Below are positions 54,222-57,653 of a stretch of DNA of 64,000 nucleotides, piece after piece; position 1 is the stretch's first letter; each line of letters begins with the position of its first letter. The notes under the pieces were generated by a model. The model did no database searches and was not told the DNA's origin. It saw only the letters and a list, made by a program, of their open reading frames with translations. The stretch is taken from positions 124,001 through 188,000 of the IMG/VR virus record IMGVR_UViG_3300046804_003469; one strand, written 5' to 3'. The translations under genes were made by a program, and so were the position numbers.

Positions 54222-55282
54222 TGTTATTAACCGAAGAGAATGCCATTTGGGCAGCAAATCAATTCATACAATATTATTCTGATTTTAATCGTATTGACGA
54301 TTATATGAGGTTTGTTAAAAAGAGTAGAATTGAAAATTCTGTTGGAAAATTATTTGGACCTCATGATGAAATCTTTTCAGATTTTTCTTTAGATCCAAAT
54401 AATATGTCATTTGCAATTCATGAAGTTGACACAAGTTCAAAACCAAAATCAAAGTATAACCAAGAATTATACTCTGAAATTTTGAACATGACTGCATCAA
54501 ATGCTATTGAAGAAGCAATTCCAGGTAGAACTATTAAATGGATTGTTACTGAAGAAACAACTAAAAAAATTGTCGGAGTTGTTCGTTTTGGGTCTCCTAC
54601 AATTAACTCAAAACCAAGAAATGATTATTTTGGTGAAGTTCTTCCTCTTTCCACAATTAATCAGCAGTTTGTAATGGGATTTAACATTGTTCCCGTCCAA
54701 CCATTTGGATATAATTATCTTGGCGGAAAACTTCTTGCTCTTTTAGCATCATCAAATTATCTTAAAAGACAATTTGATTTGAAGTATGGAACTGATCTTC
54801 AGTATTTTGAAACTACTTCATTGTATGGAACAACAAAAGGTGTATCCATGTATGATGGTCTTAAACCTTACATCAAACATATTGGAGATACTGAAAGCAA
54901 ATTTCTTCCTTTGTTTCATGATGATTATTTTAGAGATTTATTCTGGTGGTTTAATAATAATGCTAATGGCGGAGAAAGATTAATCTCTGCAGATAAGTCT
55001 TCTAAAAAATTAAAAATACAAGTGAAAATGATTTCAATTATTCGCCATTCTCTTAAGGACGAAAATAAATTAAATGAGTTTAATGCGTGTATTGAAAAAG
55101 CAAAATCATTAACTGAAAAGAAAAGATACTATCTTTCAAAATTTGGTTATGAACCAGAAGATGTTATTGCTTGGTGGAAAGTTAAGGCATCTAAAAGATA
55201 TAATAAATTAATTCTGGAGAATAAGTTAAGAACAAAAATTGAATTATGGGAACCTGGAGTTGATTTGGAGATTATTCGATGA
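54221..55282 (+). CDS. DUF4338 (Druantia DruA-related) family protein
   Basis: IPGRTIKWIV...VGVVRFGSPTINSKPRN, IVPVQPFGYNYLGGKLLALL, ETTSLYG...SMYDG. Confidence 0.7.
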   Translation: MLLTEENAIWAANQFIQYYSDFNRIDDYMRFVKKSRIENSVGKLFGPHDEIFSDFSLDPNNMSFAIHEVDTSSKPKSKYNQELYSEILNMTASNAIEEAIPGRTIKWIVTEETTKKIVGVVRFGSPTINSKPRNDYFGEVLPLSTINQQFVMGFNIVPVQPFGYNYLGGKLLALLASSNYLKRQFDLKYGTDLQYFETTSLYGTTKGVSMYDGLKPYIKHIGDTESKFLPLFHDDYFRDLFWWFNNNANGGERLISADKSSKKLKIQVKMISIIRHSLKDENKLNEFNACIEKAKSLTEKKRYYLSKFGYEPEDVIAWWKVKASKRYNKLILENKLRTKIELWEPGVDLEIIR

Positions 55283-55422: not shown

Positions 55423-55802
55423 TGGAACTGAAAGATTGGTTGAATTCGATAAATCAAACAAAAGTAAATTTAATTGATGATGATTTATCTTTAGAAAAAG
55501 AATATGCTCCATTCATCATCAATAGGTGTCTTTCTGGTCATATTGATTGTATTATGTATGCAAATGAGATGAACAGGTATAATTTTTTGCCAAAAAAGAT
55601 GCAGTATGATTTTTTTATAAATAGTCTGAGGAAAAAAAAGAGATTCTCTCCTTGGCTCCGAAAAGATCAAATCAAAGACTTAGAATGTGTTAAACAATAC
55701 TATGGATATAGTAATGAAAAAGCACTACAATCTTTGAAGATTTTAAACAAAGAACAAATCAACTTTATTAAACAACGACTTGAAATTGGCGGAAAGAAAT
55801 GA
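55422..55802 (+). CDS. gp62: Clamp loader small subunit gp62
   Basis: YAPFIINRCLS, ANEMN, QYDFFINSLRKKKRFSPW, YYGYSNEKA. Confidence 0.93.
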   Translation: MELKDWLNSINQTKVNLIDDDLSLEKEYAPFIINRCLSGHIDCIMYANEMNRYNFLPKKMQYDFFINSLRKKKRFSPWLRKDQIKDLECVKQYYGYSNEKALQSLKILNKEQINFIKQRLEIGGKK

Positions 55803-56239
55803 CTAATCAAACTATTGAACCACAAGTAAATTGGTCTCCTGAGATGATGGTGGAAGTTATTCTGAATGAACCAGATGACTTTCTTAAAGTTCGTGAAACT
55901 TTGACTCGAATCGGAGTTGCATCGAGAAAGGAGAAAAAACTCTATCAGAGTTGCCACATTCTTCATAAGCAAGGTAGATATTATCTTGTTCACTTTAAGG
56001 AACTGTTTGCTCTGGATGGTAAACATGCAAACCTGACTGTGAATGATGTTCAGCGTCGCAATCGTATTACTCGCCTTCTTTCTGATTGGGGGTTAATTAC
56101 TGTTGTAAAAGAAGAATCTATTGCAGATATTGCTCCCCTCAATCAAATTAAAGTTCTTTCTTATAAAGATAAAGGTGATTGGATTTTAGAGCAAAAATAC
56201 AATATTGGTAAAAAAGGAAAAGGTCAGGAAACCGAATGA
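55799..56239 (+). CDS. regA: Translational repressor RegA
   Basis: DDFLKVRETLTRIGVAS, LYQSCHILHKQGRYYLVHFKELFALDG. Confidence 0.98.
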   Translation: MTNQTIEPQVNWSPEMMVEVILNEPDDFLKVRETLTRIGVASRKEKKLYQSCHILHKQGRYYLVHFKELFALDGKHANLTVNDVQRRNRITRLLSDWGLITVVKEESIADIAPLNQIKVLSYKDKGDWILEQKYNIGKKGKGQETE

Positions 56240-56245
56240 TTTTGT

Positions 56246-56270
56246 AGGGAGGTCAACACCTCCCTTTTTT
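56246..56270 (+). terminator. Intrinsic terminator after regA
   Basis: AGGGAGGT-CAAC-ACCTCCCT followed by a T run. Confidence 0.85.
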
Positions 56271-56290
56271 AATGAATTTTGATATATATT

Positions 56291-56379
56291 AGTGATGGGA
56301 TTGGAAATTCCACCCATACGCTAAAGCGGAGTCTTCGGATCCGTAAGTCAAAACACTCGCTTATTCAAGGAGAACTCAA
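56291..56379 (+). promoter_or_regulatory. Structured hsp20 5' leader, ROSE-like RNA thermometer candidate
   Basis: Three hairpins. The last pairs CTC-G-CTT with the SD AAGGAG and leaves a bulged G (UCGCU motif). Confidence 0.6.
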
Positions 56380-56826
56380 ATGTTTAACACTTCAGTTACC
56401 AAATACTATACATCTAATAATGGAATTGAAAAGTTGTTTCAAGATTTAGAAAAAAATTCAATTGGTATGGATGAATGGTTCCATAGAATTGGAACTCTCC
56501 ACGAATCATCTGCCAATTACCCTCCATATAATTTAATTAAAGAAAGTTCTACAGAGTTTACTTTAGAAATTGCTCTGGCAGGATATAAAAAAGAAGATAT
56601 TGAAGTGACAACAGAATGGAACAAACTTTTTGTAGAAGTTAAAAAAGCAAAGACTGAATATGAATATATGCATAATGGAATTGCTCGTAGAGCATTTACT
56701 AGAACATGGACTTTATCTGATGATGTAGTTGTTGGTGATGTTTCTTTTGTAGATGGATTACTCACTATTAAACTAAATAGAGTTATTCCAGATCATCAAA
56801 AGAAAAAAGTATATGATATCTTTTAA
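56380..56826 (+). CDS. hsp20: Small heat-shock protein Hsp20
   Basis: NYPPYNL, LEIALAGY, HNGIARRAFTRTWTL, DGLLTIKL alpha-crystallin motifs. Confidence 0.96.
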   Translation: MFNTSVTKYYTSNNGIEKLFQDLEKNSIGMDEWFHRIGTLHESSANYPPYNLIKESSTEFTLEIALAGYKKEDIEVTTEWNKLFVEVKKAKTEYEYMHNGIARRAFTRTWTLSDDVVVGDVSFVDGLLTIKLNRVIPDHQKKKVYDIF

Positions 56827-56971
56827 AGAGTTTATGGAAATCATTCAAGAAAAGGTTGGAGATTTTGGAAATCCACCTTTACCAACTCCAGTAAACTGTT
56901 ATGGAAAAACTGTGAAATATGCCATGGCTCCTGGAAAGAAAGTTTGTGCTTTTAAAAGAAAAAGAGAATAA
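56813..56971 (+). CDS. 52-aa late protein with CTS-like N-terminus (not in the ORF track)
   Basis: MISFKEFMEIIQEKVGDFGNPPLPTPVNCYGKTVKYAMAPGKKVCAFKRKRE. CTAAATA late-promoter variant at 56773-56779 inside hsp20. Confidence 0.55.
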   Translation: MISFKEFMEIIQEKVGDFGNPPLPTPVNCYGKTVKYAMAPGKKVCAFKRKRE

Positions 56972-56974
56972 ATA

Positions 56975-57044
56975 ATACGGGTTATCCAAATATCGTCGGC
57001 GCGGAGGGGAAACTGGCACAATCCAGTTGACTCCCCTCTTTTTT
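56975..57044 (+). ncRNA. Candidate ~65-nt small RNA between a late promoter (56967-56974) and a terminator-like hairpin
   Basis: No ORF. GAGGGGA-AACTGG-loop-CCAGTT-gac-TCCCCTC followed by T6. Confidence 0.35.
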
Positions 57045-57055
57045 CATGGTAAAAT
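57011..57055 (+). promoter_or_regulatory. Sigma70-type promoter embedded in the hairpin, with an upstream AACTGGCACA box
   Basis: TTGACT-17 nt-TAAAAT; box to -10 spacing is 30 nt. Confidence 0.7.
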
Positions 57056-57076
57056 TAAAAGAGGTATGAAATTCTT

Positions 57077-57418
57077 ATGACTATAAAACTTGCAATTTTA
57101 AAATCTGGGGAAAGTATAATTACTGATATTAAAGAAGGAATTGTAGATGATAAAGTAGTTGCTTACATTTTCAATAGTCCTTGTACAGTTTCTGTAAATG
57201 GAACATATAAAATTTTAGATGATAATGAAGATACTGCTGAGAAATTAAGTCTTAAATTGCAACCATGGCCTTATCTTTCTGTAGATAAAGTTGTAACTGT
57301 AGTTTTGGATTGGGTAATTACAATTGTTGAACCTAATCCAGAACTTAAAGAAATGTACGAAAAAGAGGTATTAAAAAATGGAACAACAGAACATCAAACT
57401 ACTGATACTGCACAATAA
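57077..57418 (+). CDS. Hypothetical protein, Sm-like fold candidate
   Basis: IKLAILKSGESIITDI...P...LQPW...VITIVEP. Confidence 0.75.
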   Translation: MTIKLAILKSGESIITDIKEGIVDDKVVAYIFNSPCTVSVNGTYKILDDNEDTAEKLSLKLQPWPYLSVDKVVTVVLDWVITIVEPNPELKEMYEKEVLKNGTTEHQTTDTAQ

Positions 57419-57653
57419 TGTTATTCTAATAACTCAAATTGAAGAAGTAGGTTCAGAACTTGGAGAACCTGATTGTAAATTAATTGAACCTTTTGTGGTC
57501 AACAAAAATGATCTAACAAACTCAATAATTCTTGAACCATGGTTAATTGATGTTACATCACAAAACACATACATGATTCATTCAGATAAAATTCTGACAA
57601 TCGCTGATCCTAAACCAACCCTCCTTGAAAAATACCAAAATTTGATTAAATGA
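57378..57653 (+). CDS. Hypothetical protein, paralogue of the preceding gene
   Basis: IKLLIL...LITQI...P...LEPW...ILTIADP. Confidence 0.75.
   Translation: MEQQNIKLLILHNNVILITQIEEVGSELGEPDCKLIEPFVVNKNDLTNSIILEPWLIDVTSQNTYMIHSDKILTIADPKPTLLEKYQNLIK

What the first reader, a model, noticed from the sequence alone, without database searches (positions are those of the whole stretch)
56291..56382. ROSE-like RNA thermometer upstream of phage hsp20
Seen: hairpin 1 (ATGGG...CCCAT, 56295-56317) and hairpin 2 with a C(UUCG)G tetraloop (56326-56344). A final hairpin pairs CUC-G-CUU (56356-56362) with the SD AAGGAG (56367-56372), leaving G56359 bulged. Known: ROSE thermometers precede bacterial small heat-shock genes, have 2-4 hairpins, and use U(U/C)GCU with a bulged G opposite the SD. 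The sequence here contains UCGCU in that position. Inference: the phage senses temperature at the RNA level to time its chaperone; I know of no such description for a cyanophage.
Basis: partly seen in the sequence, partly recalled or inferred. Interest (0 to 1): 0.75.

Follow-up and report, generated by a model that had tools for sequence, protein, structure and literature searches.

The report
ROSE-like leader of cyanophage hsp20
The untranslated leader of this cyanophage's small heat-shock gene folds like the bacterial ROSE RNA thermometers and is conserved in every related cyanophage examined, so the phage probably makes more of this chaperone as temperature rises, though nobody has measured this.

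Summary
The window is a T4-like cyanomyovirus: regA, terminator, a -10 box, an ~86-nt leader, then hsp20.

The last hairpin (56356-56372) pairs UCGCU with AGGA of the Shine-Dalgarno sequence (SD) and leaves G56359 bulged. It matches the sensing hairpin of the E. coli ibpA thermometer at 15 of 17 positions.

The single sequence is weak evidence: z is about -2 per hairpin, and the SD is no more occluded than in the phage's other genes. Comparison is decisive.
- All 118 distinct hsp20 leaders (164 loci, freshwater and marine) keep an SD-sequestering hairpin with the bulged G.
- Loops vary; stem changes keep pairing, including a compensated 3-nt register shift.
- The motif occurs once in the 215-kb genome.

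A model built only from two-hairpin cyanophage leaders finds the window's leader (25.5 bits, E 1e-5). Those relatives match Rfam ROSE_3 over its full length, up to 35 bits, below its 43-bit cut-off. The protein is IbpA-like (class A).

Verdict: a sub-threshold, previously undescribed phage member of the ROSE-like family. The anatomy is well supported; thermosensing is inferred. IbpA-style autoregulation is a live addition or rival.

The parts
55799..56239 (+). regA (translational repressor) gene, upstream neighbour; context only
   Evidence: ORF; Pfam PF01818 Translat_reg, E 1e-44; the regA-hsp20 order is conserved in cyanophages.
56246..56271 (+). Intrinsic terminator of regA (8-bp G+C-rich stem, then a T run); it isolates hsp20 as its own transcription unit
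   Evidence: Terminator scan; an equivalent terminator sits in the related loci.
56285..56290 (+). Inferred -10 promoter hexamer TATATT (TATAAT in most relatives); no clear -35
   Evidence: Conserved TATAAT-like box 4-8 nt upstream of the first hairpin in both leader types. The transcription start near 56294 is inferred, not mapped; no RNA run was listed.
56294..56319 (+). Hairpin 1: 5'-terminal stem-loop with a conserved GAUG...CAU-N-C base and a variable upper stem. It is found only in the three-hairpin leader type.
   Evidence: -9.0 kcal/mol, z -2.08. RNAalifold recovers it, and 3 pairs change on both sides in 18, 4 and 20 of 45 sequences. It is absent from two-hairpin leaders and from L076.
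56326..56344 (+). Hairpin 2: 5-bp stem, bulged G56331, two pairs, UUCG tetraloop. It is the counterpart of ROSE hairpin I.
   Evidence: -7.1 kcal/mol. Model R1 aligns it to hairpin I of the two-hairpin leaders. That helix has changes on both sides at 7 of 8 pairs. The Rfam ROSE and ROSE_3 consensus structures have the same form.
56345..56355 (+). A/C-rich single-stranded linker
   Evidence: Variable in sequence and length among relatives, and unpaired in all folds of the two-hairpin core.
56356..56372 (+). SD hairpin, the proposed sensor: anti-SD UCGCU (56357-56361) with bulged G56359, loop 56363-56366, SD AAGGAG (56367-56372)
   Evidence: It matches Rfam ROSE_2 positions 41-57 locally at 15 of 17 bases. 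It is conserved with pair-keeping changes in 118 of 118 distinct leaders.
56380..56826 (+). hsp20: a class-A, IbpA-like small heat-shock protein of 148 aa; the start codon lies 7 nt after the SD
   Evidence: Pfam HSP20, E 5e-12. The best NCBIfam match is IbpA, E 6e-23. It is 32% identical to E. coli IbpA from residue 1, E 4e-26.

Best explanation
The 5' untranslated leader of the phage hsp20 mRNA is a ROSE-like RNA thermometer of the short type, with one extra 5' hairpin.

Shown:
- hsp20 has its own -10 box, placed after the regA terminator.
- The leader contains two stable hairpins. One of them has the ROSE hairpin-I form: stem, bulged G, two pairs, tetraloop.
- After an unpaired A/C-rich linker comes a weak 6-bp hairpin. 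In it UCGCU pairs with AGGA of the Shine-Dalgarno sequence around a bulged G, and the AUG stays free.
- This arrangement is conserved, with pair-keeping changes, in all cyanophage hsp20 leaders examined. It also occurs in bacterial class-A sHSP genes.

Inferred:
- At low temperature the hairpin hides the SD from the 30S subunit. As temperature rises it melts gradually, like a zipper, and translation of Hsp20 increases without any protein factor.
- The predicted stability is -5.8 kcal/mol at 15 C, -4.4 at 25 C and -2.8 at 37 C. That is about 1.8 kcal/mol weaker than the E. coli ibpA hairpin, which would place the response in the cooler range of picocyanobacterial hosts.
- The upstream hairpins would act as a folding scaffold and as 5'-end protection.
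- Phage Hsp20 may also bind this leader and repress itself, as IbpA does. The residues IbpA needs for this, Arg93 and Tyr34, are conserved as Arg104 and Tyr47.
For: Anatomy at the stated coordinates.

Conservation:
- All 118 distinct leaders from 164 loci keep a bulged-G hairpin over the SD, and 114 show 6 of 6 pairs.
- Loops are mostly 3-4 nt (up to 7) and vary in sequence.
- Stem changes keep pairing: CUC to CUU gives U.G; the SD variant AAGGGG gives U.G; CUU/AAG becomes CUC/GAG.
- Thirty-three distinct leaders use a register shifted 3 nt downstream (GAC-G-CUU with GAG-GUC), with matching changes on both arms and a shortened loop.
- In the pair counts, 10 of 14 pairs change on both sides, 91.9% of cells are paired, and both controls are exceeded.
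- G.U pairs are frequent. This fits an RNA on this strand rather than a DNA site.

Specificity:
- The motif occurs once in the 215-kb genome.
- Model R1 gives one significant hit per whole genome, at hsp20, in this phage, S-PM2, P-TIM68, S-SM2 and S-SRM01.
- A 64-nt leader query hits 109 isolate records, all of them cyanophages.

Family link:
- The E. coli ibpA leader scores 100 bits on ROSE_2, and its sensing hairpin is CUC-G-CUG/CAG-GAG.
- The window aligns locally to exactly that part of the model.
- Two-hairpin cyanophage leaders match ROSE_3 over positions 1-69 at 23-35 bits; the best E-value is 9e-4.
- A Novosphingobium homologue has a true ROSE at 59.8 bits, with the same hairpin-I form.
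- Legionellales sHSP genes carry the same two-hairpin leader.
- The protein is IbpA-like. Cyanophage sHSPs are reported to be closer to bacterial class A than to cyanobacterial sHSPs (PMC3827213).

Definitions of ROSE-like elements: PMC3669281 and PMC4152365.
Against: - No experiment and no RNA data exist. No RNA run was listed, and the transcription start is inferred.
- No Rfam ROSE model reaches its gathering score.
- The predicted hairpin is weak. The energy needed to open the SD (2.66 kcal/mol at 25 C) ranks 61st of 123 crude ribosome-binding sites of this phage, so the SD is not unusually hidden.
- Every hairpin weakens with heat, so melting predictions cannot tell a thermometer from an ordinary leader.
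- The full-length fold of the window's leader is ambiguous: the centroid keeps only hairpin 1, and an alternative fold competes.
- The 3' arm is the SD, which is constrained anyway. Much of the conservation of the 5' arm is therefore invariance rather than covariation.
- The alignment used for the pair counts was fitted to the model.
Confidence: 0.6

Rival explanations
1. The leader is mainly an operator for autoregulation. Hsp20 oligomers bind their own 5' leader and repress translation, and unfolded client proteins titrate them away, as shown for IbpA. Temperature itself is secondary.
For: - IbpA represses its own translation through its ROSE-type 5' UTR. It needs Arg93 and an aromatic residue at position 34 (PMC10474464).
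- The window's Hsp20 aligns Arg104 to Arg93, Tyr47 to Tyr34 and Arg108 to Arg97. Arg104 and Tyr47 are invariant in four divergent cyanophage Hsp20s.
- Both conserved hairpins have a 5'-side bulged G, which could be a repeated protein contact.
- The octamer ACUCGCUU is more invariant than pairing alone seems to require.
Against: - Lys98 of IbpA is Thr109 here.
- No binding data exist for any phage sHSP.
- In bacteria this mode acts together with the thermometer, not instead of it, so it is more an addition than an alternative.
Confidence: 0.2
2. The leader is an inherited but constitutive element. The 5' hairpins stabilise the mRNA, and the weak SD hairpin only sets a fixed translation level. 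There is no useful temperature response in the host's range.
For: - The SD is no more occluded than the median ribosome-binding site of this phage.
- The hairpin is predicted at only -2.8 to -4.4 kcal/mol.
- Stable tetraloop hairpins at the 5' end are typical stabilisers.
Against: - A fixed dampener would not need the exact ROSE anti-SD with its bulged G to be kept in 118 of 118 leaders.
- It would not need to be rebuilt in a new register when the sequence changed.
- The motif occurs before no other gene of the genome.
- ROSE helices are known to depend on non-canonical pairs that the energy model ignores (PMC4166951; PMC3669281).
Confidence: 0.14
3. The conserved sequence is the binding site of the phage translational repressor RegA, whose gene lies just upstream.
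For: - regA is adjacent in all cyanophages examined.
- Pfam names its family as a bacteriophage translational regulator; that T4 RegA acts at ribosome-binding sites of early mRNAs is established knowledge.
Against: - The stretch between the SD and the AUG varies freely among leaders.
- The conserved motif is found before hsp20 only, not before other genes.
- The same leader occurs in Legionellales sHSP genes; one of these (L202) sits in a bacterial context, next to a ClpS-like gene.
Confidence: 0.04
4. It is a DNA-level site: a Pho box or another transcription-factor site.
For: A putative Pho box that overlaps the same motif was predicted upstream of S-PM2 hsp20 (PMC10976474). ROSE itself was first taken for a protein-binding DNA site (PMC4166951).
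Against: - The same paper found no PhoB binding to that fragment and no response of the gene to phosphate.
- The half of the predicted box that falls in the hairpin loop is not conserved.
- The spacing between the arms varies, and G.U pairs make the complementarity specific to one strand.
- The site lies downstream of the -10 box.
Confidence: 0.02

Closest known systems
Short ROSE-like thermometers of Pseudomonas ibpA (Rfam ROSE_3, RF02523; Krajewski et al. 2013, PMC3669281)
   Same: - A 5' hairpin with a stem, a bulged G, G-C pairs and a tetraloop, then a single-stranded linker.
- A short 3' hairpin in which U(U/C)GCU pairs imperfectly with the SD, with the AUG unpaired.
- It precedes a class-A sHSP gene.
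- Cyanophage two-hairpin leaders align to the whole model.
   Different: - Scores stay below the 43-bit cut-off: 10.4 bits for the window and at most 35.1 for relatives.
- The window carries an extra 5' hairpin, and its hairpin I is one pair shorter.
- The pair above the anti-SD core is U-A rather than G-C.
- The carrier is a phage of cyanobacteria.
- Function is untested.
E. coli ibpA thermometer (Rfam ROSE_2, RF01832)
   Same: The sensing hairpin is nearly the same: 3 pairs, a bulged G, 3 pairs and a 4-nt loop, with 15 of 17 bases identical to the model consensus. The proteins are homologous.
   Different: - The upstream hairpins are unrelated in sequence.
- The E. coli stem has a G-C top pair and is about 1.8 kcal/mol more stable.
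- The E. coli helix extends beyond the core.
Classical ROSE of alpha-proteobacteria (RF00435)
   Same: Same hairpin-I form and same UYGCU/SD pairing. A Novosphingobium homologue of the phage protein carries one at 59.8 bits.
   Different: Classical ROSE has three to four hairpins. Its final helix is long, includes the AUG, and is predicted at -16.7 kcal/mol at 37 C in that example. The model does not hit the phage leader.
Cyanobacterial sHSP thermometers: Synechocystis hsp17, and Anabaena avashort and avalong (PMC4152365)
   Same: They control sHSP translation in the phage's host phylum. avalong has a ROSE-like anti-SD.
   Different: hsp17 is a single hairpin without UCGCU. avalong has a bulged U and a long first hairpin. 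Phage sHSPs are reported not to derive from cyanobacterial sHSPs (PMC3827213).
Phage lambda cIII mRNA thermosensor (from general knowledge, not checked here)
   Same: A phage mRNA whose translation depends on temperature-sensitive structure.
   Different: It switches between two alternative structures and is more active at lower temperature. It has no ROSE motif and is not linked to a chaperone gene.

Membership tests
ROSE / ROSE-like RNA thermometers | Lies in the 5' UTR directly upstream of a small heat-shock (Hsp20/IbpA) gene | tested here: met
   The leader ends at the hsp20 start codon. The protein hits Pfam HSP20 and matches NCBIfam IbpA best, and it aligns with E. coli IbpA from residue 1.
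ROSE / ROSE-like RNA thermometers | Two to four stem-loops in about 60 to over 100 nt (PMC3669281, PMC10474464) | tested here: met
   Three hairpins in about 86 nt, counted from the inferred start. Relatives have two. The length depends on an unmapped transcription start.
ROSE / ROSE-like RNA thermometers | A U(U/C)GCU motif in the 3'-proximal hairpin that pairs imperfectly with the SD, with the G bulged | tested here: met
   UCGCU at 56357-56361 pairs with AGGA at 56368-56371, and G56359 is bulged. The stretch aligns to ROSE_2 model positions 41-57.
ROSE / ROSE-like RNA thermometers | The anti-SD/SD pairing is kept among homologous leaders | tested here: met
   Kept in 118 of 118 distinct leaders. 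Seven arm combinations occur and all are pair-compatible, including a compensated register shift.
ROSE / ROSE-like RNA thermometers | A 5' hairpin with a stem, a bulged G, 2-3 G-C pairs and a tetraloop, as in the Rfam ROSE and ROSE_3 consensus structures | tested here: met
   Hairpin 2 of the window. The consensus structures are printed. The helix covaries at 7 of 8 pairs.
ROSE / ROSE-like RNA thermometers | A score at or above the Rfam gathering threshold of ROSE (45), ROSE_2 (65) or ROSE_3 (43) | tested here: not met
   In the window, ROSE gives no hit at the site, ROSE_2 gives 10.7 bits (local) and ROSE_3 gives 10.4 bits. The best relative reaches 35.1 bits on ROSE_3. The positive control, E. 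coli ibpA, scores 100.4 bits.
ROSE / ROSE-like RNA thermometers | Non-canonical, heat-labile pairs in the sensing helix (PMC4166951) | not testable with these tools
   This needs NMR or chemical probing. Only the bulged G that permits such pairs is visible.
ROSE / ROSE-like RNA thermometers | Temperature-dependent opening of the SD and temperature-dependent translation | not testable with these tools
   Only energy-model values are available: -5.8, -4.4 and -2.8 kcal/mol at 15, 25 and 37 C. No RNA data were listed.
fourU thermometers | Four consecutive U that pair with AGGA of the SD | tested here: not met
   The partner of AGGA is UC-G-CU. The U runs seen in relatives lie in the loop.
Cyanobacterial Pho box | Repeats of PyTTAAPyPy(T/A) that are bound by PhoB | tested here: not met
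   The repeat half that falls in the loop is not conserved. PhoB did not bind the S-PM2 hsp20 upstream fragment (PMC10976474).
IbpA-type self-repression through the own 5' UTR | An Arg equivalent to IbpA Arg93 and an aromatic residue equivalent to Tyr34 in the protein | tested here: met
   Arg104 and Tyr47 align to them and are invariant in four cyanophage Hsp20s. RNA binding itself is not testable here.

The most novel reading that the evidence does not exclude
An ancestor of the T4-like cyanophages acquired a proteobacterial class-A sHSP gene together with its ROSE thermometer, and the pair became part of the cyanophage core genome. The sensing hairpin was weakened so that it responds in the 10-30 C range of picocyanobacteria. 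The most abundant phages of the ocean and of lakes would then carry their own protein-independent temperature sensor. This would be the first ROSE-type thermometer known in a virus, possibly combined with Hsp20 self-repression.
Probability: 0.4. Interest if true: 0.75.

Novelty: new member of a known kind. Interest (0 to 1): 0.62.

Why it matters
hsp20 is a core gene of T4-like cyanophages (PMC3037559), but how it is regulated is unknown.

If the leader is a working thermometer, these phages sense temperature themselves after they have shut down host gene expression. That bears on how infection of Synechococcus and Prochlorococcus responds to warming and to daily or seasonal temperature change.

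It would also extend the ROSE family from alpha- and gamma-proteobacteria to viruses. It would give a natural series of 118 leader variants, with graded predicted stabilities, for studying how thermometers are tuned. A 2024 review still treats temperature-responsive phage RNA structure as speculation (PMC10884466).

If it is not temperature-responsive, it is still a well-defined, gene-specific structured leader worth adding to RNA family libraries, which currently miss it.

Tried and rejected
- A broad Rfam scan of 55800-57100 found nothing at the site. Only a narrow scan exposed the weak ROSE_2 and ROSE_3 alignments.
- Whole-genome searches with ROSE and ROSE_3 gave only noise elsewhere, and the tool's control genomes did not ring above the cut-off, so those controls were uninformative.
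- The SD opening energy of hsp20, compared with 123 crudely called genes of the phage, was merely median. This is a real negative for 'unusually sequestered'.
- The MAFFT alignment of three-hairpin leaders misaligned the SD hairpin, and RNAalifold did not recover it. I used a covariance model and an anchored parse instead.
- RNA-seq support: no RNA run was listed.
- Doron et al. 2016, the Syn9 transcriptome with mapped transcript starts, is not held.
- A ROSE_3 search of 151 genomes of the class of a Legionellales MAG, meant to collect bacterial comparators, found nothing and the controls were silent; it is uninformative.
- Model R1 does not find the E. coli ibpA leader. It gives only a 9.9-bit hit (E 6.8) upstream of ibpB.
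- With filters off, R1 gives a 19.4-bit antisense hit at 54462-54506. That stretch has no anti-SD/SD motif, so I judged it chance.
- The small CGC-UAAA-GCG hairpin between hairpins 1 and 2 was rejected, because its variants are not compensated.
- The window-specific fold that pairs CUUC of the hairpin-2 loop with GGAG was rejected as not conserved.

Full report
CONTEXT. The window comes from a complete 215-kb T4-like cyanomyovirus assembled from a freshwater metagenome. Around the finding the order is as follows:
- regA, 55799-56239 (Pfam Translat_reg);
- an intrinsic terminator, 56246-56265, followed by a T run;
- a 110-nt spacer;
- hsp20, 56380-56826 (Pfam HSP20; the best NCBIfam match is IbpA);
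- a 52-aa ORF, two further short ORFs (57077-57653), then DNA polymerase gp43.

The regA-hsp20 order is shared with S-PM2, P-TIM68, S-SM2, S-SRM01 and many other cyanophages.

OBSERVATION.
- Hairpin 1 (56294-56319) folds at -9.0 kcal/mol.
- Hairpin 2 (56326-56344) folds at -7.1 kcal/mol. Its best register has five pairs, a bulged G56331, two pairs and a UUCG loop.
- The SD hairpin (56356-56372) folds at -2.8 kcal/mol at 37 C and -4.4 at 25 C. G56359 is bulged, and UC-G-CU lies opposite AGGA.

Taken alone the evidence is thin.
- Each hairpin has z of about -2.
- The sequence pattern is expected 0.15 times per window by chance.
- The full leader has a competing fold.
- The energy needed to free the SD ranks 61st of 123 crudely called ribosome-binding sites of the same phage.

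COMPARATIVE EVIDENCE. I fetched 166 hsp20 loci, from IMG/VR and isolate records. Of these, 164 had at least 60 nt upstream of the start codon, giving 118 distinct leaders. Every one has G-C-Y-Y preceded by three bases that, together with it, pair across the SD and leave that G bulged. In 114 of them my parser scores 6 of 6 pairs, and at least some of the rest are parsing artefacts.

The loop varies in sequence and is mostly 3-4 nt long, up to 7. Changes in the stem keep pairing:
- CUC to CUU gives a U.G pair, in two separate leaders;
- the SD variant AAGGGG gives a U.G pair;
- CUU/AAG becomes CUC/GAG, a change on both sides.

The most telling case is a group of 33 distinct leaders that use a register shifted three bases downstream. 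There GAC-G-CUU pairs with GAG-GUC, two substitutions have occurred on each arm, and the loop has been shortened.

Leaders in which the SD is followed by C can also pair the 'bulged' G with that C. The SD is then hidden in either register.

I built a covariance model (R1) only from two-hairpin leaders.
- It finds the window's leader at 56321-56385, at 25.5 bits with E 1e-5. Hairpin 2 maps onto the model's hairpin I and the SD hairpin maps exactly.
- It gives one significant hit per whole genome, always at hsp20, in this phage and in four isolates.
- On the model-fitted alignment, 10 of 14 pairs change on both sides and 91.9% of cells pair. When partners are slid the figure is at most 58%, and no shuffle reaches the observed values. 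The fit to the model favours the structure, so these numbers are somewhat generous.

Hairpin 1 covaries at three pairs among the three-hairpin leaders. It is absent from the two-hairpin type and from L076, so it is an accessory module.

A TATAAT-like box lies 4-8 nt upstream of the first hairpin in all types. From this I infer a start near 56294; it is not mapped.

RELATION TO ROSE. As a positive control, the E. coli ibpA leader scores 100.4 bits on Rfam ROSE_2. Its sensing hairpin has the same 3 pairs, bulged G, 3 pairs and 4-nt loop.

A narrow scan aligns the window to exactly that part of ROSE_2 (10.7 bits, 15 of 17 bases) and weakly to ROSE_3 (10.4 bits). Both are far below the cut-offs.

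The two-hairpin cyanophage leaders match ROSE_3 over all 69 positions at 23-35 bits. The best E-value is 9e-4, from a search of 33 kb against 4227 families. Every hit lies at the hsp20 start.

The similarity includes hairpin I: a GGAU stem, a bulged G, CC, a tetraloop, GG, then GUCC. Classical ROSE has the same hairpin I, and a Novosphingobium homologue of the phage protein carries a true ROSE at 59.8 bits. Two sHSP genes of a Legionellales MAG, one of them next to a ClpS-like gene, have the same two-hairpin leader with UUGCU.

The phage protein is 32% identical to IbpA over its full length. Cyanophage sHSPs have been reported to be closer to bacterial class A than to cyanobacterial sHSPs (PMC3827213).

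These facts fit a gene and leader inherited together from a class-A sHSP locus. That is an inference. The defining features of ROSE-like elements are taken from PMC3669281, PMC4152365 and PMC4166951.

ENERGETICS. The isolated SD hairpin of the window is predicted at -5.8, -4.4 and -2.8 kcal/mol at 15, 25 and 37 C. The medians of the 118 leaders are -6.0, -4.6 and -3.0. The E. coli ibpA hairpin is at -6.3 and -4.6 at 25 and 37 C.

The phage hairpin at roughly 15-20 C is therefore about as stable as the E. coli one at 30-37 C. This would suit cooler hosts. However, the energy model ignores the non-canonical pairs on which ROSE sensing depends, and any hairpin weakens with heat. These numbers permit the thermometer reading but do not prove it.

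MECHANISM AND RIVALS. My best reading (0.6) is a zipper-type thermometer. The weak SD hairpin opens gradually with warming. The stable upstream hairpins act as a folding scaffold and as 5' protection.

A second layer is plausible. IbpA represses its own translation by binding its ROSE leader, and needs Arg93 and Tyr34 to do so (PMC10474464). The phage protein keeps both, as Arg104 and Tyr47.

The alternatives are weighed in the Rival explanations section:
- autoregulation as the main role;
- a constitutive leader that only tunes translation and stabilises the mRNA;
- a RegA operator;
- a DNA site.

A published Pho-box prediction overlaps the S-PM2 motif. The same paper found neither PhoB binding nor a phosphate response for that gene (PMC10976474).

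NOVELTY. Searches of the held literature found no description of a thermometer in a cyanophage, or of a ROSE-type element in any phage. I combined cyanophage, hsp20, thermometer, ROSE-like and phage as search terms. A 2024 review treats temperature-responsive phage RNA structure as a speculation. Rfam's models miss these leaders at their thresholds.

I therefore file it as a new, sub-threshold member of a known kind. It is widespread: 109 isolate records, all cyanophages, match a 64-nt leader query.

Noticed in passing
window 56969-57075 (+): A weak match to the wcaG RNA motif (18.4 bits, gathering score 42), downstream of the 52-aa ORF. It overlaps a terminator-like stem with a T run and a TTGACT-17-TAAAAT promoter-like site at 57027-57055.
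   Followed up: no
window 56813-56971 (+): A 52-aa ORF that overlaps the end of hsp20 by 14 nt. ORFs of the same size follow hsp20 in P-TIM68 and S-SRM01. It has no Pfam or NCBIfam match.
   Followed up: partly
L012, L015, L021 and L025 upstream of position 1440; L083 1040-1110: Many related phages carry an extra conserved stretch of about 70 nt, with a hairpin, between the regA stop and the terminator. The window lacks it. Weak PrrB_RsmZ matches fall in the corresponding stretch upstream of the hsp20 leader in L084, L135 and L146.
   Followed up: no
L084 1320 (S-SRM01, MW015081.1): The deposited hsp20 start lies inside leader hairpin I. The ATG preceded by the SD is about 51 nt downstream, so the annotated protein is probably too long at its N-terminus.
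   Followed up: partly
L181-L185 and L187 (genome contigs): Contigs filed under Psychromonas, Acidibacter, Thermoplasmata, Actinomycetota, Acidimicrobiaceae and Pacearchaeota MAGs carry a cyanophage-like hsp20 with the phage-type leader (R1 30-74 bits). They are probably phage contigs binned into MAGs.
   Followed up: no
L190 234-310; L202 1501-1563: A Legionellales MAG has two class-A sHSP genes, each with the same two-hairpin leader and UUGCU. One is followed by a ClpS-like ORF.
   Followed up: partly
window 56329-56377 (+): A fold specific to this window pairs GAGU-CUUC-GGAU of hairpin 2 with AUUC-AA-GGAG-A-ACUC. It would hide the SD more strongly (MFE -10.5 against about -9.9 kcal/mol for the two separate hairpins). 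Close relatives do not keep it.
   Followed up: partly
window 56320-56325 (+): The linker GCUAAA between hairpins 1 and 2 is nearly invariant among three-hairpin leaders, yet no paired partner for it is supported. The reason for its conservation is unexplained.
   Followed up: no
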